Shown here: positions 4,289-63,702 of the stretch, piece after piece
Position numbering within the stretch: the first letter of the stretch is position 1
How the letters are laid out: every line of letters begins with the position of its first letter
Virus record (IMG/VR): IMGVR_UViG_3300020477_001008
Span: 178,647-242,646 of that record
Strand: one strand, 5' to 3'
DNA: 64,000 bases
Made by a program: the position numbers and the translations under genes
Notes under the pieces: model-generated
Databases searched by the model: none
Seen by the model: the letters and a program-made list of their open reading frames with translations, nothing else
Told to the model about the DNA's origin: nothing

Positions 4289-4364
4289 GGGCGGTTAGCT
4301 CAGTTGGTAGAGCATCTCGTTTACACCGAGGGGGTCAAAGGTTCGAGTCCTTTACTGCCCACCA
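4289..4364 (+). tRNA. tRNA-Val (TAC)
   Basis: Cloverleaf GGGCGGT/ACTGCCC, anticodon loop TT TAC AC, TTCGAGT, encoded CCA. Confidence 0.97.
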
Positions 4365-4368
4365 TTAC

Positions 4369-4444
4369 GGAGTATTAGTGTAGCGGTTAACACGTCGCCC
4401 TGTCACGGCGAAGACCACGGGTTCGAATCCCGTATACTCCGCCA
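4369..4444 (+). tRNA. tRNA-Asp (GTC)
   Basis: GGAGTAT/ATACTCC acceptor stem, TCGCC CT GTC AC GGCGA, TTCGAAT, CCA. Confidence 0.97.
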
Positions 4445-37003: not shown

Positions 37004-37078
37004 GGTCCCTTCGTCTATCGGTTAGGACAGCGGTTTTTCATACCGCAAAGAGGAGTTCGATTCTCCTAGGGACTACCA
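37004..37078 (+). tRNA. tRNA-Glu (TTC)
   Basis: GGTCCCT/AGGGACT, GCGGT TT TTC AT ACCGC, TTCGATT, CCA. Confidence 0.96.
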
Positions 37079-46993: not shown

Positions 46994-47542
46994 ATGACAC
47001 AGCACATTATGATCGATCTGGAGACGTTAGCCACAACTATAGATGCCAATATTCTAACAATAGGTGCTATAAAGTTTGACCCCAATGAAGATTATAGTAA
47101 CTGGAAGTGGGGAGAGTATCCTAAGACGCAGGTTTTCTATAGAAGAATTGATCCTGAATCTGGATCCAAAATTGGATTGAAAAATGATGATGAAACTATT
47201 GCTTGGTGGAGTCAGCAATCAGATGAAGTTAAAGCTGAAGCATTCGCTGAAGAAGAAAGATATCCAATTGACCAAGTAATGAAAGAGTTTTATAAATTTT
47301 GTTTGCCTGGAAAATATTTTTGGGCTCAAGGTGTAGCTTTTGATACTGTAATATGTGAACAAGTATTTAAAAAATTAAAACGTGGTGCTCCTTGGATGTT
47401 TTATAATTTACGTGATACTAGAACATTATTTGATTTAAAAGATCCAAATATGCCAAGTGCTAGACACCATCACGCATTATTTGATTGTTGGAGACAAATT
47501 GTAGGGGTACAAAATGTTTATAGACAAATCTACAAAAATTAA
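46994..47542 (+). CDS. DEDDh 3'-5' exonuclease
   Basis: IMIDLETL, QGVAFD, RDTRTL, HHALFD. Confidence 0.8.
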   Translation: MTQHIMIDLETLATTIDANILTIGAIKFDPNEDYSNWKWGEYPKTQVFYRRIDPESGSKIGLKNDDETIAWWSQQSDEVKAEAFAEEERYPIDQVMKEFYKFCLPGKYFWAQGVAFDTVICEQVFKKLKRGAPWMFYNLRDTRTLFDLKDPNMPSARHHHALFDCWRQIVGVQNVYRQIYKN

Positions 47543-48602
47543 AAGAATAGGTTTTTGTTGTAAATGGTTAAACGATCCTAGTGAAACTAGGGGTATGAAA
47601 ATCAATGCTAAAGATAGAGATCTAAATGGTAGAGCAACTACTATGCGTTGGTTACGAGAACATCCAGAAGAAGCAGAACAAAGACAATGGGACATTATGA
47701 ATCATAATGCCACAGCCGCTCGTAAAATGATTGAACGTGTAGCAACATTACCTTTAGAACGTAGAATGGTTAGATTAGGTAGTGAAATGTTACAAGGTTA
47801 CACAGAACCTAATTGGATTGATTGGTGGCAACAAAAAAATGTCCAAGATCATTTAGAAAAAATATTTGCACCTGTTGGTGATGCTTCAAGAAAACATAAT
47901 GTTAAGATAAGTTTTCATCCTGGGCAATTTTGTGTACTTGCAAGTGCCACACCTGATATTGTAGAACGTAGTATATTAGAATTTGAATATCACGCAGATA
48001 TGGCTCGTTGGATGGGTTTTGGCAAAAGCTTTCAAGATGGTTGCAAACTAAATGTACATATTTCAGGTAAGCAAGGTCCAGAAGGCATTATTAAAGTATT
48101 ACCCAAATTATCATCAGAAGCAAGAAATCTTATTACTATTGAAAATGATGAAATGGGTTGGGGCCTAGATGCTAGTTTACAATTAGAAAATCATTTAGCA
48201 TTAGTATTAGATATACATCATCATTGGATACGTGATGAAGAATATATACGACCTACAGATGATAGGGTTAAAAGAGTTATTGATAGTTGGCGTGGTCAAC
48301 GTCCTACTTTACATTATTCATATAGTAGAGATGAAGCACTTGCTCCTGCAAATTTAGGAAACAAAATGCATACAGAAATGCACAATATAAAAGATTTAAT
48401 AGCCAAAGGCTGTAAAAAACAAAAATTAAGAGCTCATAGCGACTTTTATCCTAATAAAAAAGCAAATGATTGGGCTTTAAGTTTTAATGAAGAATTTGAC
48501 ATACAGGCAGAGTCCAAGGGTAAAAATTTAGCTTCGCAGATGCTTTATGAACAGTCTATTGGTGTAAAACAGTTAAATGAAGAGTGGCAAGCCGTTTGTT
48601 AA
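47514..48602 (+). CDS. uvsE: UV-damage endonuclease (UvsE/UVDE)
   Basis: RIGFCC, RMVRLGSE, ISFHPGQF, NVHISG, TIENDE, LVLDIHHH, LHYS, RAHSD, QAESKGKN. Confidence 0.9.
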   Translation: MFIDKSTKIKRIGFCCKWLNDPSETRGMKINAKDRDLNGRATTMRWLREHPEEAEQRQWDIMNHNATAARKMIERVATLPLERRMVRLGSEMLQGYTEPNWIDWWQQKNVQDHLEKIFAPVGDASRKHNVKISFHPGQFCVLASATPDIVERSILEFEYHADMARWMGFGKSFQDGCKLNVHISGKQGPEGIIKVLPKLSSEARNLITIENDEMGWGLDASLQLENHLALVLDIHHHWIRDEEYIRPTDDRVKRVIDSWRGQRPTLHYSYSRDEALAPANLGNKMHTEMHNIKDLIAKGCKKQKLRAHSDFYPNKKANDWALSFNEEFDIQAESKGKNLASQMLYEQSIGVKQLNEEWQAVC

Positions 48603-48634
48603 CACAGAGCTAGGTACAGATAAATATTTGTGTT

Positions 48635-50209
48635 ATGAGAGCAACGCATTTAAATACGGCAGTTTTTGCATTTGGAAGGTTTAATCCACCTACAATTGGT
48701 CACGGTAGATTGGTAGAAGTTGTTAAAAAACAGCCAGGAACACCTTTCTTATTTTTAACTCATACGCAAAAACCAAAAACAGATCCATTAACATTTGAGC
48801 AAAAAGTAAAGTATGCTAAAGCTAGTTTTACTAATATTAAAATTGGTGATAGTTCTGTAAGAACATTAATACAAGCTTTACAAAAACTAGAGTCTTTAGG
48901 ATTCTTAAATGTAATAATGGTTGCTGGAGATGATAGACTACAACAGTTTACAGACTTTTTACCAAAGTACAATGGTAAAGATTATAGTTTTGAAAGTGTT
49001 AAAGTTGTTAGTGCTGGAGAAAGAGATCCAGATTCAGATGGTGCTATAGGTATGTCAGCAAGTAAAATGAAAGCTATGGCAGTTGCCGGTGACTTTAAAG
49101 GATTTCAAAAAGGAACTATTAATCCTGATATAGCAAAAAGTATGTATGATGATGTAAGAGCAGGTATGGGAATTACCGAAATTAAAGAAGCACAATATCC
49201 AATGCCAAAAGTTTATGTTGATATGGATGGTGTGTTAGCAGACTTCTTTACAGCTTTAGCAAAATTTAGAGGAGTTGACCATTGGAAAGATGGCGGCCAC
49301 GATAGTGTACAAGATTCAATTGAAGCAATTCAAGGAACAGATTTCTTTTCAACATTACCAGTATTCAATACCGCACCAAATATTATTAATAGTGTAAAAG
49401 CATTTACTGGTGGCGAATGGTATATTAATTCATCTCCATTAAGAGGAGATCACGAAAATTCTACAAAGCATAAATTAGATTGGCTTAAGAAGAATAATTT
49501 TGATCCAACAGATGTTGTTATAACAGGAAGAAAAGAATCGTATGCAATTAATAAACAAACAAATCAACCAAACATATTAATTGATGATAAGCCATCTAAT
49601 TTAGAAAGATGGACATCTAAAGGTGGTATTGGAATTAGATATCAAGCAACACAAGATAATCCAATGAGAGTACAAAAAGGTTTAGAAGTAATTAAAAATT
49701 ATTTAGAAAAAAATAATGGATTAATAGATCCTAAAGATGTTGCTGAATTAAATAAAGCAATTGATACAGGACAACTAATGGAGAATGGTGGAAAAATTAT
49801 TCCAGGTGTTAATACTACTCACGATGTTGGTCCTAATGAAATAAAAATACAAGCAAAGAAAATGGGATTTACAGTTAGTAAAGATGGAGTACCACCAATT
49901 ATGAAACCAAAAAATTTAAGAGAATATATTAAACTTATTGAAGAAAGAGATACAAGAGAATTGAAATTTCAAAATAGAGATGGAAAATATTCTATGTTGA
50001 GTTTACCAGGAACACAAAAATGGCAAAAAGATAAAAAGACTGCAGAACCAGGAACAGACAAATGGTTTAAAACTTGGAAAACATTACCATATTTAACTAA
50101 AGGTAGAAAGAATCATTATATGCTACCTATAAAAGAAAAGTTAAATGAGTTAGAAAATTTATTAAAAGAATACGGAGTTATTAAAAATGAAAATAAAAGA
50201 GATAGCTAA
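48635..50209 (+). CDS. Nucleotidyltransferase (cytidylyl/NMN adenylyltransferase-like) fused to HAD 5'-nucleotidase and extra modules
   Basis: FGRFNPPTIGH...SAGERDPD...MSASKMK, then VYVDMDGVLADF...ILIDD...GGIGI; ATAAATA-N8-ATG. Confidence 0.8.
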   Translation: MRATHLNTAVFAFGRFNPPTIGHGRLVEVVKKQPGTPFLFLTHTQKPKTDPLTFEQKVKYAKASFTNIKIGDSSVRTLIQALQKLESLGFLNVIMVAGDDRLQQFTDFLPKYNGKDYSFESVKVVSAGERDPDSDGAIGMSASKMKAMAVAGDFKGFQKGTINPDIAKSMYDDVRAGMGITEIKEAQYPMPKVYVDMDGVLADFFTALAKFRGVDHWKDGGHDSVQDSIEAIQGTDFFSTLPVFNTAPNIINSVKAFTGGEWYINSSPLRGDHENSTKHKLDWLKKNNFDPTDVVITGRKESYAINKQTNQPNILIDDKPSNLERWTSKGGIGIRYQATQDNPMRVQKGLEVIKNYLEKNNGLIDPKDVAELNKAIDTGQLMENGGKIIPGVNTTHDVGPNEIKIQAKKMGFTVSKDGVPPIMKPKNLREYIKLIEERDTRELKFQNRDGKYSMLSLPGTQKWQKDKKTAEPGTDKWFKTWKTLPYLTKGRKNHYMLPIKEKLNELENLLKEYGVIKNENKRDS

Positions 50210-50651
50210 AGATCCTTGTTGGAGCGGTTATAAACAAATTGGAATGAAAAAGAAAAATGGTAAACAAGTACCAAACTGTGTACCAAACGAATCAATTGAA
50301 GTTACATTAGATGATAATCAAGACTTTCACGAAGAATATGGATATCTAGGTTATAGTATTGATGAAAATGATTTATTTGAAGCTGAGTATCAAGGTAGAA
50401 CAGTTAAATTAAACAAACCAACACGTGGTGATGTTAAAAAGTTTAAAGTGTATGTCAAAGATCCAAAAACAGGAAACGTTAAAAAAGTTAATTTTGGACA
50501 CGGCGGTACAAGTGCTAAAAAAGCCGGACAGAAAACTATGAAAATTAAAAAGTCAAATCCTGAAAGAAGAAGATCTTTTAGAGCAAGACATAATTGTAAA
50601 AATCCAGGACCTAAAACAAAAGCAAGGTATTGGAGTTGTAAGGCTTGGTAA
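50187..50651 (+). CDS. Basic phage protein (DUF6321-like C-terminus), putative head protein
   Basis: MKIKEI N-terminus; KKVNFG...RRRSFRARHNC...KARYWSCKAW. Confidence 0.6.
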   Translation: MKIKEIAKDPCWSGYKQIGMKKKNGKQVPNCVPNESIEVTLDDNQDFHEEYGYLGYSIDENDLFEAEYQGRTVKLNKPTRGDVKKFKVYVKDPKTGNVKKVNFGHGGTSAKKAGQKTMKIKKSNPERRRSFRARHNCKNPGPKTKARYWSCKAW

Positions 50652-50652
50652 T

Positions 50653-50856
50653 ATGAGATTATACGAGATAGTTGAAGCTAGTTGGTATCAAGATGTAAGG
50701 TTACAGCCAAAGAGACTTACGACTAAAAAGCCTCGTAAACTTTTACCAAAACCTATAAGAAAAATAATTGTTAAAAGACCAAAAAGAATTAAAAGTCATA
50801 TGAAAACTGACTTTACTAGAAGAGCTGATAAATCATCTTGGTTAGCAGGAAAGTAA
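50653..50856 (+). CDS. Small basic protein with capsid-targeting-like N-terminus
   Basis: MRLYEIVE followed by a Lys/Arg-rich body. Confidence 0.6.
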   Translation: MRLYEIVEASWYQDVRLQPKRLTTKKPRKLLPKPIRKIIVKRPKRIKSHMKTDFTRRADKSSWLAGK

Positions 50857-50857
50857 A

Positions 50858-51556
50858 ATGAAACTTGCAGAATTTTTTTTAAAAGAAAACTTTGATTTAA
50901 CCGATTTGGTTTATTATGATGAAGTCCAACTTAAAAAGTCAGAGAAAAAAGTAGAAGAATATGAAGCACATCATTTAAAAGATGGTTGGCAAGATATTAA
51001 ATTAGAATCACCACCTGATAATAATAGTGATGAAACTAAAAATGAATTAGTTACTATTACTAACATACAAGAAAAAAGAACTGAAGAAGATGAAAATTCT
51101 ATTCACGTTTCTGATATGATGGACGCATTTCATTTTAGAGAATTTTTAAATGCAAAGAAAATAGATTATAGATCTAGCGAAATATCAGCTATTATTGATG
51201 ATGTATGGAAAGTAGTTAGAACATATAAAAATATGTATAATAGACCTAGGCCATATCAAATTGCTGAAGCATATAATATGGAGTTTGATACAATGTACGG
51301 TCAGAGTAACAAAACACCTGCTTATCCTAGTGGTCACAGTTGTGGTGCTAGAGTAGTTGCTGAATACCTATCAAAAAAATATCCTGAGCATAAAGAAAAA
51401 TTTTTAGAGATAGCTGAAAAAATTGGCATAGGAAGAATACAAGCTGGTTTTCATTATCCATCAGATCACGTAGCAGGAATAGATCTTGCATTAAAAGTTT
51501 TTCCTTATTTAGAAATATCAGAACAACATTTGGACGATTATAAAAATGAAAATTAA
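50858..51556 (+). CDS. PAP2-superfamily acid phosphatase
   Basis: KNMYNRPRP, PAYPSGH, GRIQAGFHYPSD; MKLAEFFLKE leader. Confidence 0.85.
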   Translation: MKLAEFFLKENFDLTDLVYYDEVQLKKSEKKVEEYEAHHLKDGWQDIKLESPPDNNSDETKNELVTITNIQEKRTEEDENSIHVSDMMDAFHFREFLNAKKIDYRSSEISAIIDDVWKVVRTYKNMYNRPRPYQIAEAYNMEFDTMYGQSNKTPAYPSGHSCGARVVAEYLSKKYPEHKEKFLEIAEKIGIGRIQAGFHYPSDHVAGIDLALKVFPYLEISEQHLDDYKNEN

Positions 51557-52016
51557 AGATATTACAAATGAATGGATTCCAATATATAGCACAATGAAAG
51601 CTTATGGTATGAAACGTGCTAAACATCCAGACGGTTCAAGATATTTTAAATTAGCTGAACAAGAAATTACAGATCAAGATTTACAGCAATTAGAAACGTA
51701 TGCTGATAGATTATTTGCATCATTAGGAATTGATGTTGCATTTTCAAAACATTTTAAAGACAGATTAAATGATCCAAGAAATAAAAAACCAATAACAATG
51801 GGAGAACTTACTAGGTTATTTAGACAGGTCTATAAACAACACGGTAAGCCAATTGCACAATTAGGTCCAGACGCAGAAGCAGTAATGAAAGATATGAAAA
51901 CTGATGTAAATGTTCCATTTGCTTTACAATGGGATGGCAACGAATTAGATTTAGTTGCAAAAACAGTTATGCGTAAACAAAACTTTGCAACGCCTAATCC
52001 TGAATTTAGAATTTAA
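51546..52016 (+). CDS. Hypothetical phage protein with capsid-targeting-like leader
   Basis: MKIKDITNE leader; FSKHFKDRLNDPRN...KTVMRK core. Confidence 0.65.
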   Translation: MKIKDITNEWIPIYSTMKAYGMKRAKHPDGSRYFKLAEQEITDQDLQQLETYADRLFASLGIDVAFSKHFKDRLNDPRNKKPITMGELTRLFRQVYKQHGKPIAQLGPDAEAVMKDMKTDVNVPFALQWDGNELDLVAKTVMRKQNFATPNPEFRI

Positions 52017-52026
52017 GAGAGTTTTT

Positions 52027-52230
52027 ATGAAATGGGCGTTGGTGATTTTATATTTTGTAGTGGGACCTGAAGGTGGTTGGTATGAAAGTGAACGTAAATT
52101 TTTTAAAACAGAAACAGAATGTAAAGAGCATATGGAGTTCTTTAATTCTATGCCAAAGCCAGGAACAATGACATCAAGATGTATTACTAGTACAGATGAA
52201 GGTTGGTGGAATAAAAAGGATAGTATATAA
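52027..52230 (+). CDS. Small secreted/membrane protein
   Basis: MKWALVILYFV, F.TETEC...C; start at ATG 52027. Confidence 0.55.
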   Translation: MKWALVILYFVVGPEGGWYESERKFFKTETECKEHMEFFNSMPKPGTMTSRCITSTDEGWWNKKDSI

Positions 52231-52556
52231 TGGAATTATTACTTAAAGCAATTATTGGTGGTATAGTAATTGCAACAGTTAGTACAGTTGGACAACGTTA
52301 TCCCACTATAGGAGCCTTTGTGTTAGGTGTACCATTAGCAACATTTGTGTCATTTATTTTTATGCATTATGCTGGAGTAGATGTACAAACATTTAAAACT
52401 ATTAGTATACAAACTGTATACTTTGTGTTAATTAGTTTATTATTCTTTCCTGTATTTGTTTTTATGTTACCGCAATATGGATTTTTAATGTCAATGCTTT
52501 CTGGAGTTGTAATTTCAGGTTCATTGATGCTATTATTATTAAAGTATGTCAGCTAA
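52230..52556 (+). CDS. Four-TM membrane protein (DUF3147-like)
   Basis: KAIIGGIVIATVS...YPTIGAFVLGVPL. Confidence 0.55.
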   Translation: MELLLKAIIGGIVIATVSTVGQRYPTIGAFVLGVPLATFVSFIFMHYAGVDVQTFKTISIQTVYFVLISLLFFPVFVFMLPQYGFLMSMLSGVVISGSLMLLLLKYVS

Positions 52557-52761
52557 TTTTGATAAAACACATAATCAGTTTTGTAAAGTTTACGTGGCTA
52601 ATGAGAAAAAGACTGATACATTTCATTGGGGATACTTTACTAAACGTATGGTTGATAAAGAGTTTAAAGAATTAGTTAAGTCAGACGAATGGGATGTTAT
52701 AGTAGTTGATGATATTACTAAAGAAGAATTTGATAAAATAATGGAACCATATACAGGATGA
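52546..52761 (+). CDS. Hypothetical protein
   Basis: Coupled ORF. Confidence 0.55.
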   Translation: MSANFDKTHNQFCKVYVANEKKTDTFHWGYFTKRMVDKEFKELVKSDEWDVIVVDDITKEEFDKIMEPYTG

Positions 52762-52988
52762 TTGATTGGGATAGACATAAAAGACCACAGTATGAACCAC
52801 CAAGTTGGATTGAGTGGCAACCAACTAATCCTATGAAATATTTGTTTATGCTTTGTCTTGTTCTTTGGATACTTCCAGTTTTATTTGGATTAATTTTAAC
52901 ACCCTTAGGTGCAATAGTTAATATTTTATTTGTTGATTGGGTTATGTATAAAAGAGATACTTCTTTTTTAAACCGTGATCGTGATTAA
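52758..52988 (+). CDS. Small membrane protein
   Basis: Two hydrophobic segments. Confidence 0.55.
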   Translation: MIDWDRHKRPQYEPPSWIEWQPTNPMKYLFMLCLVLWILPVLFGLILTPLGAIVNILFVDWVMYKRDTSFLNRDRD

Positions 52989-52996
52989 ATATTATT

Positions 52997-53542
52997 ATGC
53001 ACAAAGAATATTTTTTTCATATACCTAAACTAGATTTAAATGATGAACAAAGGTCTATATTACATAAAAAATATCTAGTTTCTAAAATTACACATAAAGG
53101 TTATAATAAAAATACGCATCAATATCTTAAAACATTTCATACTGAAATTGATGTTTTAAAAGACATTTATTCAAGTAAAATAATTAAGCAAATAGAAGAT
53201 TTATGTGAAGGATTACCTATAGATAAATTTAATAGACACACGTCATACGAATTTTTAAAAACAGAAGGTAAAGTTGAAATACATAGAGATCCTGTACGTT
53301 TAGCAGTTTTAGTTATTCCTTTGTTTAGTAAAGAAAACAATAAATTAGAATTTTGGAATGAAGAAGAAACAAAAATTGTTAATGAATTAGATTATGGTAC
53401 TAAAACCTATATAATGAGAACTCGTGTGCCTCATAGTGTATCAACTAGTAAAAAACCAAGGGTTTTTTGGCAGGGAAGTATTTTTACAAGAGATTTTGAT
53501 GAAGTGTTAAAAGATTATCGTCAAGGACGACTTTTTAAATAA
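52997..53542 (+). CDS. Cupin / 2OG-Fe(II) oxygenase-like protein
   Basis: IHRDPVR...PHSV...PRV; TTAAATA-N5-ATG. Confidence 0.5.
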   Translation: MHKEYFFHIPKLDLNDEQRSILHKKYLVSKITHKGYNKNTHQYLKTFHTEIDVLKDIYSSKIIKQIEDLCEGLPIDKFNRHTSYEFLKTEGKVEIHRDPVRLAVLVIPLFSKENNKLEFWNEEETKIVNELDYGTKTYIMRTRVPHSVSTSKKPRVFWQGSIFTRDFDEVLKDYRQGRLFK

Positions 53543-53550
53543 ATATTGTT

Positions 53551-53754
53551 ATGATAGAATGGATAAAAAAATTGTTCGCATCGCAGACTTACGAACTAAT
53601 TATAGAGCATTTAGGAACAGTAAAAAATTATACAGTTACTAAGGTTTATACATTAAATGATCGTACTGCTCATTTTAAAGCAATAGATGGCGAAAAATAT
53701 ACATTAAGAAGTGCTGATAAAATGAGTTGGTCTTTAAGAAAGATTACAAAATGA
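53551..53754 (+). CDS. Hypothetical protein
   Basis: ATAAATA-N5-ATG. Confidence 0.6.
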   Translation: MIEWIKKLFASQTYELIIEHLGTVKNYTVTKVYTLNDRTAHFKAIDGEKYTLRSADKMSWSLRKITK

Positions 53755-53951
53755 GTAAATTTAGAGTAATTGAAAAATCAAATAAAACGTTTATTCTTAA
53801 ACAAGAGAACGTAATTGAAGCTATTGCTAACTTTCTTGCTGATGCTGGTATGCTAGAAGAAGACGAAACTGAAGGTAAAATGACTTATAAAATGAACAAA
53901 GATGCTTCAATAACAGTTGAATTGCACTTTGCAAAAACCACTGTAAACTAA
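53751..53951 (+). CDS. Hypothetical protein
   Basis: ATGA-coupled to upstream ORF. Confidence 0.55.
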   Translation: MSKFRVIEKSNKTFILKQENVIEAIANFLADAGMLEEDETEGKMTYKMNKDASITVELHFAKTTVN

Positions 53952-53974
53952 AATAAACACTAAATACAGCTATT

Positions 53975-54475
53975 ATGCGTTATTCGGAAATAATTAATGA
54001 GTCAATGAGCTTTTCAGCAGGACATTCTGAGAAAAGAGAAGACGGAAACTACTGGATAAGCGACACAGATTCAGGTGATAGATATGCTCCAGAATTTTAT
54101 AAGAATATGGACAAGTATTCTAAAGATCTTGATTTAGAGCCACCTGAAAACCCAGATTATAAAGAAGAATTAGATTTATCATTATCAAACGCAAGTATGC
54201 GTGAAGTATTTCACGAATTAGGATATCCTACAGATTTAGAGGACAGAGCACCTTTTCCAATAGATGAATTTATTGGTAGAACTACACAATGGTTACAAAA
54301 AGCAATTGGCAAGCCATCTCCAGAGCAAAAACCAGAAATAGTTAAACAACCATATGGGGCTACAATGATTAGTGGTGGCAAACCAGAAGGATATTTTAAT
54401 AGAGTTATCAAAAGAATGAATGAGATTGCTAGAGCTGGGAAACAAAATGGTGCAACTCACGTGTGGGCAAGTTAG
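53975..54475 (+). CDS. Hypothetical protein with capsid-targeting-like leader
   Basis: MRYSEIINE; CTAAATA-N8-ATG. Confidence 0.65.
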   Translation: MRYSEIINESMSFSAGHSEKREDGNYWISDTDSGDRYAPEFYKNMDKYSKDLDLEPPENPDYKEELDLSLSNASMREVFHELGYPTDLEDRAPFPIDEFIGRTTQWLQKAIGKPSPEQKPEIVKQPYGATMISGGKPEGYFNRVIKRMNEIARAGKQNGATHVWAS

Positions 54476-54487
54476 GTAAATATTACT

Positions 54488-56500
54488 ATGAGACTTACAA
54501 AACTTTTTGAAGCATTAGATAAACAAGCTAAAAAGCCAAATCCAATGGCTAAAGCATTATCAGATCCTAAATTTAAGCCAAAAACAGAAACAGATAAAAA
54601 GAAAGAAGCTAAAAAAGGTTATCAAAAGCATAAAGGTAAGATAGATGAAGCAGGCTACGAAGGACAAGTAGAGCCAACACACCACGATTTTAAAAATGTA
54701 AATTTAGATTCAATTAAAAAAATTATAGCTGATAGAGATTTATCAGCAGATGCTGAAGAAGTAGATGGTGCTATTAGAGTACACACATATGATACTGATA
54801 GAAAATCAGTAGCAAAATCATTAGGAATCAATGAAGAACTTTATATTAATGGTATGAAAGATGTTGAAGATGTTATTAATATGATTAAAGACACACTTGA
54901 TGATGGTCAAATTGATAGTGCTAAAGATTATTTAGAACAGTTTAAAGAATATCTACACTCAAAAGGAATTACAGATTCAGTTGATCCTATTAGACACGAT
55001 CAAGATGCTAAAGAAGAACTTGCAAAAGAAATTTATGCTAACAATGAATATTACCAAAGTGAGTATGAAGATTGGGAAGCATTTATGAATTCAGATGATT
55101 TTGAAGAAGAAAATATGAGACTATGGAGTAAGTTTGGTGAATCAAAAATTAAACCATATGTGTCTATGTATAATGATAAAGACACAGGTAAGATGACGTA
55201 TGACGTATTAGATAGCGATGGAAAATCAGCATTTAAAACTAAAGACAAGAAAGCGGCTATGGGTTTCTTTAATAAAAACTTTGATGCTTTAAGAAAAGGT
55301 TTTGATTCATTAAAAGATGAAAATGTTTCAGCTATAGCTAAAGCAATAAATTCAGCTTATGATCCAACTTTTGGAGATACTGATAATAGATTTATGAAAA
55401 CTGTAAAAAAATTAAATCCTTTTAAAAGTGATGAATATAAAAAATTGCAAATGGCAAAACAAGCTGAAAGAGATAATCCAAATTGGAAAGGTGAGCCTGG
55501 CGACCAAGCTGGTGAAACTTTACCAAATGGAAGAAGAGCATATTACAGAAATGTAAATGGACAGAAGCAAAGAGTAGATATTTACAAAGACATATATCCA
55601 AGTGAAGCAGTTGCAGAATTTGATGGTCCAGATGAAACTAAAGATAATGCAGACTTTACAGATAAAGAAATTAAAATGGCGTTTGGTGTTTTAAATGATC
55701 CAAGATTTAAAGGTGGTAATTACAGTGGTGCTGTTAATGTTATTAATAAAATTGCACCAGGTTTAGCAGATCACCCATCAGTAGCAAATGCTTTAAAAAG
55801 AACAAATGAAAATTTAACTGAAGATCAAATGACAGATGAAGTTAAAGCAATATTAGACAAACACGGTATTAAAAGTACAGACGATATTGAATATGGTGGA
55901 GAAGCTTTTAGTGATTTATTTGATTATTTCTCAAGTGATCCTGATGAAATGCCATATGGTGTTCAAAAAGCAAGAACAGGAATGCCAGATGAATGGATTG
56001 CAAATAGAATTTTAGATTTAGGTTTACTTAAAGAAGTAGAGCCACAAATGAATCCAGAACCTAATAGACCACAACCTACTACTCCACAAAGAGGACCAGA
56101 TGATACAAGATTAAAAACAAATGTTTCTTTACAACAAATTGCTAACTTATTTCCTGGAATAGAAGATAAGCAAACATTTTTACAATCATTGTTAAGATTA
56201 AAGCAAGGGCAAAAAATTTCAATGCAACACGCATATACTTTAGCTAATGCATTTAAAGAATTAATTTCAAAAGATCCACAAGACACACAAAGAGCAATGA
56301 TACAATTAAAAAAAATCGGAGCTCAAGAGTCAATAAACGAAACTAAAGAAGATGATGCACCTGGTTATCCACACCAATATAAAACTATGAATCAAGGTAA
56401 GACGCCAGAAGAAGCATTACAAGATGAAAGAATTGAAGATAGTAAAGAATTAGAACGAATTCAAATGTTAGCAGGGTTATTTCATAGCGAGAAGGAATAA
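54488..56500 (+). CDS. Large modular putative head-internal polyprotein
   Basis: MRLTKLFE leader; unrelated short modules separated by (I/L/V)xE sites; ends ELERIQMLAGL. Confidence 0.65.
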   Translation: MRLTKLFEALDKQAKKPNPMAKALSDPKFKPKTETDKKKEAKKGYQKHKGKIDEAGYEGQVEPTHHDFKNVNLDSIKKIIADRDLSADAEEVDGAIRVHTYDTDRKSVAKSLGINEELYINGMKDVEDVINMIKDTLDDGQIDSAKDYLEQFKEYLHSKGITDSVDPIRHDQDAKEELAKEIYANNEYYQSEYEDWEAFMNSDDFEEENMRLWSKFGESKIKPYVSMYNDKDTGKMTYDVLDSDGKSAFKTKDKKAAMGFFNKNFDALRKGFDSLKDENVSAIAKAINSAYDPTFGDTDNRFMKTVKKLNPFKSDEYKKLQMAKQAERDNPNWKGEPGDQAGETLPNGRRAYYRNVNGQKQRVDIYKDIYPSEAVAEFDGPDETKDNADFTDKEIKMAFGVLNDPRFKGGNYSGAVNVINKIAPGLADHPSVANALKRTNENLTEDQMTDEVKAILDKHGIKSTDDIEYGGEAFSDLFDYFSSDPDEMPYGVQKARTGMPDEWIANRILDLGLLKEVEPQMNPEPNRPQPTTPQRGPDDTRLKTNVSLQQIANLFPGIEDKQTFLQSLLRLKQGQKISMQHAYTLANAFKELISKDPQDTQRAMIQLKKIGAQESINETKEDDAPGYPHQYKTMNQGKTPEEALQDERIEDSKELERIQMLAGLFHSEKE

Positions 56501-56503
56501 GCT

Positions 56504-57142
56504 ATGGACCTTGAATATCTAAAAAAATTAGCAGGGATAGGTGAGCAGAATCAAATGAAAAGTTTGGCTCAAGAAATGGCCGAACGTAGAAGAGACATTA
56601 TGAAAAATGTAATGAAAGAACAAAAAGAAGAACAATTGGAATTACAAGCACTTCCTTACAAAATTACAGATTTAGCACCAGTACTATCAAAAGAAAATGT
56701 TGATTATCATTATGATATATTAAGTAGAGGATACGTAAACAGATATAATAATAATGAAGGCGATTCAGACTTTAATTATGGTGGTGCAAAACTACACAAT
56801 TTATGGTGGCAACAATTTAAACCAGCAAAAGAAACATCAAATTACAGCGGTCCTATAAAGCAAACTATAGATGCTAATTATGGTGATTTAAAAGGTTTAG
56901 AAGAAAAATTAGTTGAAGCCGCAATGACTATACAAGGATCAGGATGGGTTTATCTAACTAAAACTGGAACAATTAAAACAACACCAAATCAAAGTTACAA
57001 ACCAGATGTGTTTATGCCTATAGATATGTGGGAACACAGCTTCACGGACTATGTACCAGCCAAAGACGCAAAGGTTAAATACATTAAAGCAGTTCTTAAA
57101 TTAATAGATTGGAATGCGATTAATAGAAGGTTAGAAGGATGA
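56504..57142 (+). CDS. sod: Fe/Mn superoxide dismutase with N-terminal extension
   Basis: LPY...YHY, LHNLWW, QGSGW, PNQ, DMWEH: all four metal ligands present; Gly-Gly and NQ suggest Mn-type. Confidence 0.9.
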   Translation: MDLEYLKKLAGIGEQNQMKSLAQEMAERRRDIMKNVMKEQKEEQLELQALPYKITDLAPVLSKENVDYHYDILSRGYVNRYNNNEGDSDFNYGGAKLHNLWWQQFKPAKETSNYSGPIKQTIDANYGDLKGLEEKLVEAAMTIQGSGWVYLTKTGTIKTTPNQSYKPDVFMPIDMWEHSFTDYVPAKDAKVKYIKAVLKLIDWNAINRRLEG

Positions 57143-57957
57143 ATTTAAAAGATTTTACTAAAGAAGATATTACACCTGCAGATTTAAAAAGGCTAGGTGC
57201 TTCTGAGCCTCAAATTTATATGCACAAAGATGGCAAAACAATAATGGTGCCTAAATCTAAAGAACAAGAATATGCAAAACAAGGTTATCAAAAGTCTTCA
57301 TTAAGAGCTGAAACAAAAGTAAATGAAAGAATGCCTGCGTCAGTTATCAAGCATAAAGAAAGATTAGCACATATGACGGATCAAGAACTTGCTGATAGAC
57401 ACGGTGATACTGATGAAGAAAGATTAAGACAAATGGCTTGGAGACACGGCTATGGTAAAATGAGTTCACATTATGTTGACAGAATTCGTAGAGCTAAAGA
57501 AAAAGTTGAAGGCTTACAAGAAGACTATGCAAAAATGACAAAAGATTTAATTATTAAATTAGTTAAAAAAGGTAAAACAGATGATGAAATTCAACAAGCA
57601 ACAGGGGAAACTGGTTTGCGAATTAGACTTATTAGAAAAAGTGTCGACTACGATAAAAAAGAAGAAGCAATTAAAATAGCAGAAGAAAACGCAAGAAGAG
57701 ATTTTATGAAAAAAGCGGCCGCTGGAATGGGTGCAGTAGCATTGGGAACAATGGCACCATCAGTAGCTTGGCCAGATGAACCACCTGAAAATTTTGATTT
57801 TATGGATCAGTTCTTTAGTGATAAAATTTTAAATGATCCAAAATATAAAGAGTTTAAATTAAAAGGAAATGATTTTTTAAATATGATGAAAGATTTAGAA
57901 AAGAAATGGGAAAAAGATAAACAAAAAAATAAAGATGATGGTTCAGTAGAGGTATAA
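57139..57957 (+). CDS. Modular putative head protein with internal twin-arginine signal
   Basis: MNLKDFTKE leader; ARRDFMKKAAAGMGAVALGTMAPSVA at 57691-57768. Confidence 0.65.
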   Translation: MNLKDFTKEDITPADLKRLGASEPQIYMHKDGKTIMVPKSKEQEYAKQGYQKSSLRAETKVNERMPASVIKHKERLAHMTDQELADRHGDTDEERLRQMAWRHGYGKMSSHYVDRIRRAKEKVEGLQEDYAKMTKDLIIKLVKKGKTDDEIQQATGETGLRIRLIRKSVDYDKKEEAIKIAEENARRDFMKKAAAGMGAVALGTMAPSVAWPDEPPENFDFMDQFFSDKILNDPKYKEFKLKGNDFLNMMKDLEKKWEKDKQKNKDDGSVEV

Positions 57958-57958
57958 T

Positions 57959-58210
57959 ATGTTAATATCAGAAATTTGCAATAAAAAATTAAAAGAAGAT
58001 GCCACAGCAGGAGCAACTACTTCAGGTGTAGTAGCTTCAGTTAATATGCCGATGTTTACAGGTAAAAGAGGTGGCGATCATTATGCAACAGCCAGAAAGG
58101 CTATTGATCCAATGGGTAAAATCTTTAAGAAAAAGAATTTAAGAAAAGCACCACACAAATTAAAAGATAGTGTTGACAAATTAGTATATACAAAGGAAAT
58201 CACTAAATAA
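57959..58210 (+). CDS. Small putative head protein
   Basis: MLISEICNKKLKE leader, then DATAGATTSGVVASV. Confidence 0.6.
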   Translation: MLISEICNKKLKEDATAGATTSGVVASVNMPMFTGKRGGDHYATARKAIDPMGKIFKKKNLRKAPHKLKDSVDKLVYTKEITK

Positions 58211-58239
58211 CAAAGCAGAGATAGGTGAGCGGAATTATT

Positions 58240-58725
58240 ATGAAAAACAATATAAGAAAATGGAAACAATTAATTGAAAGCTGTGGTGAAATAAACCACA
58301 CTGATTCTGGCGAACACGACCACGAAGCTTCAATGGCACGTGGACAATTATATCATATAGCCAAAGATGCAATTAACTTAATCAAATTTATTGAAAAAGG
58401 TGAAAACCTAGAAGGTTGGGTTGCATCTAAAATTACTAAAGCAAAAGAAAATATATCAGTAGTTGCAGACTATATTGAGTCAGAAAAAACTGTTAACAAT
58501 AACGATTCACCTGAAGAATATACAAAAGTACCTGAAGAAATGCCTACAGAAGAAGATAGCAAATATACAAGTATGAACAAATACGGTATCTATACTACAA
58601 AAAGTAAAGATGGTGATTTTCAAGTTTGGCAACACGACAAACATTTAGGCTCTTTTAAAACTATTCAAGATGTAGATAAGTTCTTAACTACACATCTAAA
58701 CAAAGAATCCGTTGACAATCAATAA
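58240..58725 (+). CDS. Putative head protein
   Basis: KQLIE leader; DHEASMARGQL...LEGWVASKITKA module; CTAAATA at 58203. Confidence 0.6.
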   Translation: MKNNIRKWKQLIESCGEINHTDSGEHDHEASMARGQLYHIAKDAINLIKFIEKGENLEGWVASKITKAKENISVVADYIESEKTVNNNDSPEEYTKVPEEMPTEEDSKYTSMNKYGIYTTKSKDGDFQVWQHDKHLGSFKTIQDVDKFLTTHLNKESVDNQ

Positions 58726-58740
58726 TTAATATTGTATTCT
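58712..58740 (+). promoter_or_regulatory. Sigma70-type promoter for tRNA-Thr/Asn and fdx
   Basis: TTGACA-N17-TATTCT. Confidence 0.65.
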
Positions 58741-58750
58741 ATTAACTTAT

Positions 58751-58826
58751 GCCGCTTTAGCTCAGTTGGTAGAGCAACTGATTTGTAATCAGTAGGTCCG
58801 CGGTTCGAGTCCGTGAAGCGGCACCA
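58751..58826 (+). tRNA. tRNA-Thr (TGT)
   Basis: GCCGCTT/AAGCGGC, ACTGA TT TGT AA TCAGT, CCA. Confidence 0.97.
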
Positions 58827-58837
58827 GGCTACCACAT

Positions 58838-58913
58838 TCCTCGGTAGCTCAGTTGGTAGAGCAGTTGACTGTTAATCAATTGGTCGCAGGTTCGAGTCCT
58901 GCCCGAGGAGCCA
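58838..58913 (+). tRNA. tRNA-Asn (GTT)
   Basis: TCCTCGG/CCGAGGA, GTTGA CT GTT AA TCAAT, CCA. Confidence 0.97.
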
Positions 58914-58926
58914 AAAAGGATTAACA

Positions 58927-59232
58927 ATGACACTGACTATTAATGTTATAGATAGAGACGGAAATAATCATAAAATTGAAACATTTGAAGGCCAATCTAT
59001 AGCTCAAGCAATTGTTCAACATATAAAACCAAGTGAATTTATGATATGTGGAGGTTGTTGTGCTTGTGGTACGTGTGCTGTTGATATTGATAAAAAAGGC
59101 GAACTACCTGAAATGGATGTTGATGAAGATGCATTATTAGATACAGTAGATGATAGAAATCCTAATAGTAGATTAAGTTGCCAAGTACCAATGACTAAAG
59201 AGCTTGATGGAGTTACAGTAAAGATAATATGA
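58927..59232 (+). CDS. fdx: [2Fe-2S] ferredoxin, adrenodoxin/Fdx type
   Basis: CGGCCACGTC...EDALLD...SRLSCQ. Confidence 0.9.
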   Translation: MTLTINVIDRDGNNHKIETFEGQSIAQAIVQHIKPSEFMICGGCCACGTCAVDIDKKGELPEMDVDEDALLDTVDDRNPNSRLSCQVPMTKELDGVTVKII

Positions 59233-60240: not shown

Positions 60241-60316
60241 GGGGGATTAGCTCATCTGGGAGAGCGCCTGATTTGCATTCAGGAGGTGGCTGGTTCGAGT
60301 CCAGTATCCTCCACCA
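60241..60316 (+). tRNA. tRNA-Ala (TGC)
   Basis: GGGGGAT/ATCCTCC with G3:U70, CCTGA TT TGC AT TCAGG, CCA. Confidence 0.97.
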
Positions 60317-63627: not shown

Positions 63628-63702
63628 GCGGGTGTAGCTCAGTGGTAGAGCGTCTCGTTGCCAACGAGAAGGTCAAGGGTTCGAACCCCTTTACCCGCTC
63701 CA
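63628..63702 (+). tRNA. tRNA-Gly (GCC)
   Basis: GCGGGTG/TACCCGC, TCTCG TT GCC AA CGAGA, CCA. Confidence 0.97.

What the first reader, a model, noticed from the sequence alone, without database searches (positions are those of the whole stretch)
48620..58725. 10-kb cluster of putative head-packaged cargo sharing a capsid-targeting-like leader
Seen: N-termini MKIKEI (50187), MRLYEIVE, MKLAEFFLKE, MKIKDITNE, MRYSEIINE, MRLTKLFE, MNLKDFTKE and MLISEICNKKLKE, with TAAATA boxes at 48620, 53960, 54476 and 58203. Known: T4 internal proteins use the leader MKTYQEFIAE, removed by gp21 cleavage after Glu at (I/L)xE, and are injected with the DNA. Inference: a repertoire of unrelated domains addressed to the capsid by a common tag and delivered at infection.
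Basis: partly seen in the sequence, partly recalled or inferred. Interest (0 to 1): 0.8.

Follow-up and report, generated by a model that had tools for sequence, protein, structure and literature searches.

The report
Capsid-targeting leaders on phage cargo genes
A marine jumbo T4-type phage has a gene cluster in which unrelated proteins all start with the same 5-13-residue tag, which closely matches the T4 "capsid targeting sequence"; they are therefore most likely loaded into the phage head, which extends a known T4 trick to a distant, uncultured phage group and to enzymes such as a phosphatase.

Summary
The eight N-termini and four TAAATA boxes are in the sequence as described. The window is the end of a 242.6-kb marine T4-type jumbo phage. 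Its capsid protein is 70% identical to that of Pseudomonas phage PA5oct. It encodes a gp21-type prohead protease, a gp22-like scaffold and a gp55-type late sigma factor.

The leader, M-[KR]-hydrophobic-x-[DE]-hydrophobic-x(1-4)-E, is rare genome-wide (15 of 326 genes) and concentrated here (8 of 17). Its other copies lie in the head module or on homologues of PA5oct virion proteins. It is conserved as amino acids, not codons. In relatives, each split-off domain has its own leader. Homologous SOD-like and PAP2 domains elsewhere carry swapped leaders, most ending (L/I/V)xE.

In PA5oct, leader-bearing proteins are enriched among mass-spectrometry virion proteins (8/93 against 2-3/386). Leader positions 3, 6 and (L/I)xE map onto T4 CTS residues 4, 7, 8 and 10.

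Packaging of these particular proteins and their injection remain inferred. About half the genes in the interval lack the tag.

New here: a second tag (...LAG[ILV]), shared with the scaffold's C-terminus, marks the 670-aa and SOD-like proteins.

The parts
48619..48626 (+). Late-promoter-like box GATAAATA, 8 nt before the ATG of 48635. It heads the operon 48635-52016.
   Evidence: The genome-wide enrichment of the box is; the gp55-type sigma factor is.
48635..50209 (+). 524-aa fusion of a cytidylyltransferase-like domain and an NT5C 5'-nucleotidase domain; first gene of the operon. Its N-terminus, MRATHL (MRANEL or MKATDL in relatives), is only leader-like, with Ala at position 3. It is probably not cargo.
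   Evidence: Pfam and PHROG hits. The PA5oct homologue EST35_0307 was not detected in virions.
50187..50651 (+). Tagged protein 1: 154 aa, pI 9.8, leader MKIKE|IAKD. A Cys-containing 30-aa motif is followed by a C-terminal domain (phrog_7595). In relatives the same C-domain sits behind other leaders (MRLAELE, MKLNELIE, MKLDDLL).
50653..50856 (+). Tagged protein 2: 67 aa, very basic (pI 11.3), leader MRLYEIVE|A. In size and charge it resembles the T4 internal proteins.
50858..51556 (+). Tagged protein 3: 232 aa, leader MKLAEFFLKE|N followed by a soluble class-A (PAP2) acid phosphatase with complete catalytic motifs. It has no signal peptide and no transmembrane segment.
   Evidence: Homologues carry varied CTS-like leaders.
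51546..52016 (+). Tagged protein 4: 156 aa, leader MKIKDITNE|W (P3 is Thr, so this is not a canonical site). Relatives carry MRFFELLKE or MRYAELTE in front of the same domain.
52230..53951 (+). Six small genes without the tag (52230, 52546, 52758, 52997, 53551, 53751). Two are predicted membrane proteins. They are not part of the tagged set.
53959..53966 (+). Late-promoter-like box ACTAAATA, 8 nt before the ATG of 53975.
53975..54475 (+). Tagged protein 5: 166 aa, leader MRYSEIINE|SMSF. In eight orthologues the leader varies in length, but P3 (L/I) and P1 (Glu) are kept. The AlphaFold model puts residues 1-7 at pLDDT below 50, and the fold starts at Ser10. The fold has no known relative.
54475..54482 (+). 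Late-promoter-like box GGTAAATA, exactly 5 nt before the ATG of 54488.
54488..56500 (+). Tagged protein 6: 670 aa, leader MRLTKLFE|A, DUF7230 at residues 17-51, mosaic body. A scaffold-like motif LERIQMLAGL lies at the C-terminus (nt 56450-56479).
56504..57142 (+). Fe/Mn-SOD-like protein, 212 aa. It has no M-[KR]-hydrophobic leader, but carries a 45-aa N-terminal extension that starts with the scaffold-like motif (MDLEYLKKLAGI, nt 56510-56539). The PA5oct homologue was detected in virions.
   Evidence: The leaders are interchangeable on homologues.
57139..57957 (+). Tagged protein 7: 272 aa, leader MNLKDFTKE|D (non-canonical P3). Its parts are separate genes in relatives, each with its own leader. 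An internal I-A-E (nt 57676-57684) lies directly before a Tat-signal-like segment (nt 57685-57774).
57959..58210 (+). Tagged protein 8: 83 aa, pI 10.0, leader MLISE|ICNKKLKE|D.
58202..58209 (+). Box ACTAAATA, overlapping the stop codon of 57959 and 30 nt before the ATG at 58240.
58240..58725 (+). 161-aa protein starting MKNNIRKWKQLIE|S. This resembles a third leader type (..IRxYIxLxE) seen on SOD-like homologues. It is the only instance in this genome, so the assignment is tentative.

Best explanation
The cluster is a variable (hyperplastic) locus of late genes for head-internal proteins of a T4-type jumbo phage. Eight unrelated proteins begin with a short propeptide, M-[KR]-hydrophobic-x-[DE]-hydrophobic-x(1-4)-E. 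This works like the T4 capsid targeting sequence.

Proposed steps:
1. The two hydrophobic residues three positions apart (positions 3 and 6, equivalent to T4 CTS residues 4 and 7) dock the protein onto the gp22-like scaffolding core while the prohead assembles.
2. The gp21-type prohead protease cuts after the Glu of an (L/I)-x-E site (after residue 5 and/or residues 8-13).
3. The mature protein stays inside the head with the DNA.
4. At least some of these proteins probably leave with the DNA at infection.

Two neighbouring proteins (the 670-aa protein and the SOD-like protein) carry a different address, ...hydrophobic-x-x-hydrophobic-x-x-LAG[ILV]. It copies the conserved extreme C-terminus of the scaffold protein and probably binds the same partner.

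Shown here: the tag is real, modular, selected at the protein level, associated with head or virion genes, and enriched in the virion proteome of a relative. The required protease, scaffold and late sigma factor are present.

Inferred: physical packaging of these particular proteins, cleavage, and ejection.
For: 1. Machinery. Portal, gp21-type protease, gp22-like scaffold and gp23-type capsid protein were found by PHROGs, and a gp55-type late sigma factor by PHROGs. By my alignment of the N-termini to T4 gp23, the capsid protein has an L-A-E|A site where T4 gp23 has its L-T-E|A. That T4 gp23 is cut there is from my own knowledge; the papers read only say gp21 removes an N-terminal propeptide.

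2. Specificity. In the leave-one-out matrix the eight seeds rank in the top 19 of 326. The best non-seed hits are:
- a 217-aa gene between the head-closure and terminase genes;
- a 66-aa gene between the portal and protease genes, the slot that gp67 occupies in T4;
- a 107-aa homologue of a virion protein.

3. Homologues in PA5oct. All five leader-bearing genes of this genome that have a PA5oct homologue hit proteins detected in virions by mass spectrometry. So do the SOD-like protein and the 677-aa protein that carries the LAG motif.

4. PA5oct virion proteome. The GenBank record flags 93 proteins as ESI-MS/MS. The leader occurs in 8/93 detected proteins against 2-3/386 undetected (Fisher p 5e-5 to 1.5e-4). 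Among proteins of 300 aa or fewer it is 7/51 against 2/357 (p 1e-5). With a regex built from the eight seeds alone it is 6/93 against 5/386 (p 0.009).

5. Protein-level selection. Position 2 is coded by AAA, AGA, CGT or AGG, and positions 3 and 6 by 11-13 different codons.

6. Modularity.
- Window gene 57139 corresponds to two genes in relatives, each with its own leader.
- The SOD-like domain carries LAG-type (69), CTS-type (21) or DIRxYIxLxE-type (16, plus about 7 variants among the 14 left unclassified) N-termini in 120 homologues. All CTS-type and DIRxYIxLxE-type leaders end (L/I/V)xE in front of a conserved linker.
- PAP2 homologues carry a range of leaders, running up to T4-like forms such as MIKSFKSFISE.

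7. Cleavage site. A second (L/I)xE ending at residues 7-13 is present in 8/15 leader genes against 27/311 others (p 3e-5), and in 21/27 against 16/227 in relatives. In eight orthologues of 53975, P3 (L/I) and P1 (Glu) are kept while the leader length varies. The AlphaFold fold begins right after that Glu.

8. T4 precedent.
- MKTYQEFIAE was verified twice in the T4 genome.
- The first 10 residues suffice for targeting; residues 4 and 7 matter for targeting and residues 8 and 10 for processing (PMC9026906).
- Alt is cut at ITE-6, and all T4 internal head proteins use a CTS (PMC5694885).
- T4 gp24 starts MAKINELLRE and Alt starts MELITELFDE.

9. Scaffold motif. 109 of 111 scaffold homologues end ...LAG[LI] plus at most 4 residues. 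The motif occurs 4 times in the proteome where 0.07 are expected.

10. Late-promoter-like boxes lie upstream of 48635, 53975 and 54488, and upstream of the portal, terminase and other structural genes.
Against: - There is no direct evidence for this phage. It is a metagenome assembly, so there is no virion proteome.
- None of the eight window proteins has a PA5oct homologue.
- The PA5oct virion list also contains evident cytoplasmic enzymes such as ribonucleotide reductase and thymidylate synthase. Being on the list is therefore not proof of packaging, and the enrichment could partly reflect abundant late proteins.
- Three of the eight leaders (51546, 57139, 50187) lack a canonical second (L/I)xE.
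- The refined regex was shaped after seeing PA5oct data. The seed-only test is weaker (p 0.009).
- Overall matrix scores do not separate detected from undetected PA5oct proteins (Mann-Whitney p 0.43). That is expected if only a minority of virion proteins use the tag.
- Two or three leader-regex hits in this genome (140982, 197969) have no link to the head.
- Metatranscriptome contigs cover the locus but show neither timing nor 5' ends.
Confidence: 0.72

Rival explanations
1. The tag is a prohead-core propeptide, but the tagged proteins are assembly components in the manner of T4 gp67, gp68 and gp22. They would be degraded or retained in the head. They would not be a repertoire of effectors injected into the host.
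For: The leader is also on the 66-aa gene in the slot that gp67 occupies in T4 and on acidic head-module proteins. The LAG motif is the scaffold's own C-terminus. Nothing here tests ejection.
Against: The cargo includes apparently intact enzymes (PAP2 phosphatase, SOD-like) and very basic small proteins like the T4 internal proteins. The locus varies between relatives as the T4 internal-protein locus does (PMC3012670), which is unlike essential assembly genes. One module exposes a Tat-like signal only after the predicted cut, which makes sense only in a new cell.
Confidence: 0.15
2. The shared start is a nucleic-acid feature, not a peptide signal. It would be either a mobile 5' gene cassette spread by recombination, or a translation-initiation context needed by leaderless or coupled late mRNAs.
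For: Late genes appear to have 0-3-nt leaders (TAAATA-N5-ATG in 20 genes), so the first codons could matter for initiation. Modular shuffling by regulatory cassettes is known in T4-type phages (PMC2839356 came up in the search; I did not read it).
Against: - Codons at the conserved positions are diverse and upstream sequences are unrelated.
- Most tagged genes are internal to operons, without a box of their own.
- Other box-N5-ATG genes such as portal and terminase lack the motif.
- The pattern is physicochemical (basic, hydrophobic, acidic, hydrophobic, then (L/I)xE) and correlates with virion detection in PA5oct.
Confidence: 0.05
3. The similarity is compositional chance in an AT-rich genome rich in K, E, I and L, combined with the general preference for Lys at position 2.
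For: GC content is 32%. (L/I)xE is common: 8.7% of non-leader genes have one at residues 7-13.
Against: - Seeds rank in the top 19 of 326 in the leave-one-out test.
- The leader clusters in this locus.
- It is conserved in orthologues across relatives of 65-75% identity.
- It is enriched in the PA5oct virion proteome.
- It is swapped among homologues of the same cargo.
Confidence: 0.02
4. The tag directs the proteins elsewhere, for example to export from the infected cell or to regulated degradation (an N-terminal degron for a Clp-type protease).
For: One module has a Tat-like signal right after the leader. PA5oct-type phages encode Clp components.
Against: The leader has no hydrophobic core. 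Only one module has the Tat-like segment. The association is with head-module genes, virion detection, and a cleavage site of the prohead-protease type.
Confidence: 0.04

Closest known systems
T4 capsid targeting sequence (CTS) of internal proteins IPI-III, and the short propeptides of Alt and gp24
   Same: - A short N-terminal tag sits on otherwise unrelated proteins.
- Hydrophobic residues are spaced i and i+3, with an acidic residue between them.
- The tag ends at a gp21-type (L/I)xE site.
- The genome has a gp21 protease, a gp22-like scaffold and a gp23-type capsid protein.
- The genes look late.
- The locus varies between relatives.
- Some cargo is small and very basic.
- MRYSEIINE aligns with MK(T)YQEFIAE, MKTFTQYLSE aligns without a gap, and MNLTDLFE resembles Alt's MELITELFDE.
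   Different: - The consensus is one residue shorter.
- There are at least 13 tagged genes per genome, against a handful in T4.
- The host phage belongs to a different family-level group (PA5oct-like, marine, uncultured).
- Cargo has no homology to T4 internal proteins and includes enzymes (PAP2 phosphatase) and a 670-aa mosaic protein.
- Some proteins look like polyproteins with internal sites.
- Packaging and cleavage are not demonstrated.
Head-protein propeptides of phiKZ-like giant phages (phiKZ, 201phi2-1, SPN3US)
   Same: Jumbo-phage head-internal and ejection proteins are targeted by N-terminal propeptides that a T4-related prohead protease removes after Glu (PMC5694885).
   Different: Those propeptides are mostly over 100 residues long, share no common leader sequence, and are cut at (S/A/G)-x-E. 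Here the tags are 5-13 residues long, share a consensus, and have L/I at P3. The phage has a clear gp22-like scaffold, which is not confirmed in phiKZ-like phages.
C-terminal coat-binding segment of scaffolding proteins (for example P22 gp8) and cargo-loading peptides of encapsulins (comparison from my own knowledge)
   Same: A short terminal peptide that binds the inside of an HK97-fold shell serves as an address. The LAG motif is the conserved extreme C-terminus of the scaffold (109/111) and recurs at a terminus of three other proteins.
   Different: There is no sequence similarity to those peptides. Binding to the capsid protein or core was not tested. The motif can sit at either the N- or the C-terminus.

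Membership tests
T4-type CTS / internal-protein system | A short (about 6-20 aa) N-terminal leader shared by proteins that are otherwise unrelated | tested here: met
   The eight proteins have different or no Pfam/PHROG families and a common leader. The leave-one-out matrix ranks all of them in the top 19 of 326.
T4-type CTS / internal-protein system | Targeting determinants: two hydrophobic or aromatic residues three apart (T4 residues 4 and 7) | tested here: met
   Positions 3 and 6 are I/L/Y/F/V/M in the 45 non-redundant leaders selected with a pattern that itself requires this, so the test is partly circular; the independent support is that they are coded by 11-13 different codons. The mapping onto T4 follows PMC9026906. 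The function of these residues was not tested.
T4-type CTS / internal-protein system | The leader ends in a gp21 cleavage site, (L/I)-x-E | tested here: met
   Five of the eight window leaders have a canonical site at residues 8-13, and three do not. Genome-wide it is 8/15 against 27/311 (p 3e-5), and in relatives 21/27 against 16/227. P3 and P1 are kept in eight orthologues of 53975. Cleavage itself was not observed.
T4-type CTS / internal-protein system | The genome encodes a gp21-family prohead protease, a scaffolding core and a gp23-type capsid protein with a propeptide | tested here: met
   phrog_207 protease, phrog_10922 scaffold, phrog_138 capsid protein and phrog_213 portal. By my alignment the capsid protein has L-A-E|A where T4 gp23 has L-T-E|A.
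T4-type CTS / internal-protein system | Late expression together with head genes | tested here: inconclusive
   NTAAATA boxes lie upstream of 48635, 53975 and 54488 and of structural genes (66 genes against about 5 expected). A gp55-type sigma factor is present. Timing was not measured, and the metatranscriptome contigs are uninformative.
T4-type CTS / internal-protein system | The proteins are physically inside mature heads with the leader removed | not testable with these tools
   Only indirect evidence exists: enrichment in the PA5oct virion proteome and virion-detected homologues of out-of-window leader proteins and of the SOD-like protein. The peptide-level data of the PA5oct paper are not held.
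T4-type CTS / internal-protein system | The proteins are ejected into the host with the DNA | not testable with these tools
   Inference from T4 only (PMC3012670; PMC9026906).
T4-type CTS / internal-protein system | The locus varies in gene content between related phages while the leader is kept | tested here: met
   The syntenic loci L006, L007, L009, L011 and L012 show gains, losses, fusions and splits, and the leader is present on nearly every gene.
T4-type CTS / internal-protein system | Cargo homologous to T4 IPI, IPII, IPIII or Alt | tested here: not met
   No Pfam or PHROG family of T4 internal proteins or Alt was hit. In T4 relatives the cargo is not conserved either (PMC9026906), so this does not count against the mechanism.
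phiKZ-type long propeptides | Propeptides mostly over 100 aa, cut at (S/A/G)-x-E | tested here: not met
   The leaders are 5-13 aa long with L/I at P3. The AlphaFold fold starts at residue 10.
Sec/Tat signal peptide | A hydrophobic h-region after the N-terminus | tested here: not met
   No hydrophobic segment is present in any of the eight leaders. Only an internal module of 57139 is Tat-like, and it scores below the Pfam cut-offs.
Scaffold-derived terminal address (LAG motif) | The motif is the conserved terminus of the scaffold and recurs at termini of other head proteins | tested here: met
   109/111 scaffold homologues carry it. It occurs 4 times against 0.07 expected in this genome and 3 times against 0.085 in PA5oct, where two of the three are virion-detected. 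It is interchangeable with CTS-type leaders on SOD-like homologues.
Scaffold-derived terminal address (LAG motif) | The motif binds the capsid protein or core and suffices for packaging | not testable with these tools
   No complex prediction or experiment was available.

The most novel reading that the evidence does not exclude
This group of phages may use at least two interchangeable head-address tags. One is the T4-like N-terminal CTS. The other is a separate motif, (I/L)-x-(K/R)-(K/R)-L-A-G-(I/L), borrowed from the scaffold protein's own C-terminus. With these tags the phages would load and inject active enzymes: a soluble acid phosphatase and an Fe/Mn superoxide dismutase. They would also inject mosaic polyproteins whose prohead-protease cuts release modules, including one whose new N-terminus is a Tat export signal. 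That would send an injected protein on to the host periplasm.
Probability: 0.3. Interest if true: 0.75.

Novelty: new member of a known kind. Interest (0 to 1): 0.55.

Why it matters
If this holds, a short sequence rule predicts the head-internal, and probably injected, proteins of uncultured marine jumbo phages directly from metagenomes. Injected proteins are the first phage products to meet host defences. The rule would therefore give a focused list of candidate counter-defence and take-over factors, most of unknown fold. It would also show that the T4 CTS principle is ancient and widespread across the T4-type head lineage, not a peculiarity of T-even coliphages. Finally, it offers new packaging tags, including a possible scaffold-derived one, for loading foreign proteins into large capsids.

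Tried and rejected
- **Strict T4 late promoter.** TATAAATA occurs only twice in the window, against about 16 expected. The functional unit is NTAAATA.
- **Megablast of the cluster against named phages.** Only the tRNA matched. A tblastn search with the 166-aa protein found nothing.
- **Function of the 166-aa protein (53975).** The Atlas search found viral clusters of unknown function only. The model is good (pLDDT 84.5), but Foldseek found nothing significant in PDB and only uncharacterised entries in AFDB.
- **PA5oct peptide-level data on N-terminal cleavage.** The supplements are not held. The paper does not discuss leaders or cleavage.
- **Whole-distribution test of matrix scores in PA5oct.** Not significant (Mann-Whitney p 0.43). 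Only the tail of the distribution is enriched.
- **Metatranscriptome contigs.** They cover pieces of the locus with zero mismatches, but give no direction, no 5' ends and no proof of transcription.
- **A third leader type (..IRxYIxLxE).** Only gene 58240 matches in this genome, so this stays tentative.
- **Resemblance of DUF7230 in 54488 to the ribosome-rescue factor ArfA (from memory).** Pfam gives DUF7230 only and no ArfA hit, so I do not claim it.
- **Serratia phage BF, a more distant relative.** The leader is recognisable only on the small gene after the portal gene (the slot gp67 holds in T4) and on one structural protein. The scaffold ends ...QLSGINKKR. The tags therefore fade with distance.
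- **48635 as cargo.** Rejected as unlikely: position 3 is Ala, position 5 is His, and the PA5oct homologue was not detected in virions.

Full report
**What the window is**

The window is the last 64 kb of a single 242,646-bp contig with 32% GC. PHROG profiles identify a T4-type head module outside the window: portal (phrog_213), gp21-type maturation protease (phrog_207), a gp22-like scaffold (phrog_10922) and a gp23-type major capsid protein (phrog_138). They also identify the large terminase, tail tube and head-closure proteins and a gp55-type late sigma factor (phrog_12791 and phrog_234).

The capsid protein is 70% identical to that of Pseudomonas jumbo phage PA5oct, and 65-68% identical to RaK2-like phages. 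The DNA is near-identical to contigs of many marine metagenomes. This is therefore an uncultured marine relative of the PA5oct group.

**Check of the observation**

All eight N-termini are present, each at the first start codon of its ORF. The four TAAATA boxes lie within one base of the stated places.

The leader is not a compositional accident:
- With a position matrix built from seven seeds and scored on the eighth, all eight rank in the top 19 of 326 gene calls.
- By regex, 8 of 17 genes in 48635-58240 carry it against 7 of 309 elsewhere. This regex was fitted to the seeds, so the test is circular; the leave-one-out ranking is the fair one.

TAAATA lies within 40 nt upstream of 66 genes, where about 5 are expected. 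These include the portal, terminase and other structural genes. Together with the gp55-type sigma factor, this makes it a late-promoter-like element of the whole genome. The strict T4 octamer is depleted.

The interval is not uniform. The six genes at 52230-53951 and genes 48635, 56504 and 58240 lack the M-[KR]-hydrophobic leader.

**Where else the leader occurs**

The best non-seed matches are:
- a 217-aa gene (MRYREITE) between the head-closure and terminase genes;
- a 66-aa gene (MRYKELKE) between the portal and protease genes, the slot that gp67 holds in T4;
- a 107-aa gene (MRLKEISE).

A 219-aa gene in the same module starts MKTFTQYLSE and matches a virion-structural PHROG from residue 1. 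The 107-aa gene and its 263-aa neighbour also match virion-structural PHROGs. The tag therefore marks head or virion genes independently of the cluster.

**Relatives**

Ten IMG/VR loci encode the 166-aa protein, and five of them are syntenic with window 45.9-60.2 kb. There nearly every gene of the cluster starts with the same pattern (MRLNEV, MRFFEL, MKLQEL, MRLAEL, MLINEI, MRYSEL, MNLTDL, MRISEI, MLIAEI, MLIQDI), while gene content differs.

Domains are shuffled. Window gene 57139 corresponds to two separate genes in relatives, each with its own leader. The C-domain of 50187 sits behind different N-terminal parts. The C-terminal module of the relatives' large protein is part of 57139 here.

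Across 45 non-redundant leaders, the conserved positions are coded by many different codons (Arg by AGA, CGT or AGG; positions 3 and 6 by 11-13 codons), and the upstream DNA is unrelated. Selection therefore acts on the peptide.

**Cleavage-site anatomy**

By my alignment of the N-termini, the capsid protein has L-A-E|A where T4 gp23 has its L-T-E|A. The cut site in gp23 is from my own knowledge. The protease itself starts MVQLITE.

A second (L/I)xE ending at residues 7-13 occurs in 8 of 15 leader genes against 27 of 311 others (p 3e-5). In relatives the figures are 21 of 27 against 16 of 227.

In eight orthologues of 53975, the leader varies in length (MRYSEIINE, MRYTELLE, MRFRELVQAIQE). P3 is always L or I and P1 always Glu, followed by the invariant SMSF. 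An AlphaFold model (pLDDT 84.5) leaves residues 1-7 unstructured and starts the first strand at Ser10.

Three window leaders lack a canonical second site. 51546 and 57139 have Thr at P3, and 50187 has only I-K-E at residues 3-5.

**Link to virions**

PA5oct's GenBank record flags 93 proteins found in virions by ESI-MS/MS (PMC7318152).

| Test | Detected in virions | Not detected | Fisher p |
|---|---|---|---|
| Refined regex, annotated starts | 8/93 | 2-3/386 | 5e-5 to 1.5e-4 |
| Refined regex, proteins of 300 aa or fewer | 7/51 | 2/357 | 1e-5 |
| Regex from the eight window seeds only | 6/93 | 5/386 | 0.009 |

All five leader-bearing genes of this genome that have a PA5oct homologue hit virion-detected proteins. 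So do the SOD-like protein and the 677-aa head protein.

Caveats: the PA5oct list contains some cytoplasmic enzymes, and the refined regex was shaped after looking at PA5oct. The PA5oct paper does not mention any leader or processing.

**Comparison with T4**

MKTYQEFIAE is encoded twice in T4, in the two genes at 65.7 and 66.4 kb, presumably ipII and ipIII.

From the literature:
- The first 10 residues of IPIII suffice for packaging. Residues 4 and 7 matter for targeting and residues 8 and 10 for processing. The CTS is proposed as a general way for T4-like phages to load varied proteins (PMC9026906; PMC3012670).
- Alt is cut at ITE-6 and also at its C-terminus. All T4 internal head proteins use a CTS (PMC5694885).

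The leader here is one residue shorter. Y/L/I at position 3 and I/F/L at position 6 correspond to T4 residues 4 and 7, and (I/L)-x-E corresponds to residues 8-10. T4 gp24 (MAKINELLRE) and Alt (MELITELFDE) show the same pattern. More distant PAP2 homologues carry leaders even closer to T4's, such as MIKSFKSFISE and MKTFKLFKE.

**A second tag**

The motif hydrophobic-x-x-hydrophobic-x-x-LAG[ILV] occurs four times in the proteome, where 0.07 are expected:
- at the extreme C-terminus of the scaffold;
- at the C-terminus of the 677-aa head protein;
- at the C-terminus of window protein 54488;
- at the N-terminus of the SOD-like protein 56504.

In PA5oct it is at the scaffold C-terminus and in two virion-detected proteins. 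Of 111 full-length scaffold homologues, down to 47% identity, 109 end with it.

Among the 120 best homologues of the SOD-like protein, the same domain carries one of three N-termini. 69 are LAG-type, 21 CTS-type (for example MKIRQLFE|AKE, MRLNEVTLHE|AKE) and 16 ..IRxYIxLxE-type, with about 7 more variants among the 14 left unclassified. The CTS-type and IRxYIxLxE-type leaders end (L/I/V)xE in front of a conserved linker. Different tags on one cargo are what interchangeable address labels would look like. I read the LAG motif as a mimic of the scaffold's terminus that binds the same partner. This is inference.

**The cargo**

- **50858** is a soluble class-A acid phosphatase with complete catalytic motifs. 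It has a CTS-like leader in place of a signal peptide.
- **56504** is an Fe/Mn-SOD-like domain starting at residue 46. The four metal-ligand positions are present by eye.
- **50653 and 57959** are small and very basic, like the T4 internal proteins.
- **54488** carries DUF7230.
- **53975** has a fold without known relatives.
- **57139** contains I-A-E directly before a Tat-signal-like segment. In relatives this module is a separate gene in which the leader's Glu abuts the twin-arginine motif.

**Verdict**

This is a T4-type capsid-targeting propeptide system in a distant jumbo-phage group, with an unusually large tagged repertoire.

Packaging of these very proteins, removal of the tag, and delivery into the host are inferred. 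The most novel element is the scaffold-derived second tag and the enzyme cargo. These need experiments in a cultured relative such as PA5oct.

Noticed in passing
whole genome; in the window for example 4463, 14098, 52997, 53551, 54488: The TAAATA box is spaced very sharply from the start codon. It is exactly 5 nt away in 20 genes and 6-10 nt away in 21 more, with no Shine-Dalgarno-like 4-mer in between. If it is a T4-type late -10 element, late mRNAs would be leaderless or have leaders of 0-3 nt. The PA5oct paper reports only sigma70-like promoters.
   Followed up: partly
window 57676-57774 (gene 57139); L006:10156-10473; L011:12714-13028: A Tat-signal-like segment (RRDFMKK plus a hydrophobic stretch plus AWP; below the Pfam cut-offs) follows an internal I-A-E. 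In relatives it is a separate 104-105-aa gene in which the CTS-like leader ends right before the twin-arginine motif. Protease cleavage would expose a Tat signal, so 57139 may be a polyprotein.
   Followed up: partly
window 54539-54640 (gene 54488, residues 17-51): A Pfam DUF7230 match above the gathering score (31.7 bits against 27) lies just after the leader. It is a lysine-rich segment conserved in the relatives' large proteins. Its function is unknown.
   Followed up: partly
window 21273-41408: An array of about a dozen paralogous 390-575-aa genes. Seven of the nine tested hit Pfam Radical_SAM, four of them above the curated cut-off, and one also hit SPASM. Two more radical-SAM-like genes sit between the head genes and the terminase gene. 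This is unusual for a phage.
   Followed up: partly
window 11600-13492: A full-length Hsp70/DnaK homologue (Pfam HSP70, 919 bits).
   Followed up: no
window 46994-48602: An Rv2179c-like 3'-5' exoribonuclease and a UvdE UV-endonuclease lie directly upstream of the cluster. A 2Fe-2S ferredoxin lies at 58927-59232.
   Followed up: no
window 58240-58725: The 161-aa protein starts MKNNIRKWKQLIE|S. This resembles the ..IRxYIxLxE leader type seen on SOD-like homologues of other phages. It is the only instance in this genome.
   Followed up: partly
window 1-64000: The full T4 late-promoter octamer TATAAATA occurs twice on both strands, where about 16 are expected. The shorter NTAAATA is 13-fold enriched just upstream of genes. 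This looks like avoidance of stray late promoters.
   Followed up: no
genome 161670-161963 (L003:3670-3963) and genome 11979-12215 (L004, minus strand): Two further small, very basic proteins (pI 11.6 and 9.8) carry leader variants MFISDIITD and MKVSDIITD. The second is a lone minus-strand gene with TATAAATA 5 nt upstream, in a region of plus-strand small ORFs.
   Followed up: no
window 4289-4444, 37004-37078, 58751-58913, 60241-60316, 63628-63702: Seven tRNA genes (Val, Asp, Glu, Thr, Asn, Ala, Gly). Thr and Asn directly follow the cluster.
   Followed up: no
window 53000-58900: Marine metatranscriptome contigs from the same sample as a DNA run cover pieces of the cluster with zero mismatches. 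The phage, or close strains of it, occurs in more than 15 marine metagenome runs.
   Followed up: partly
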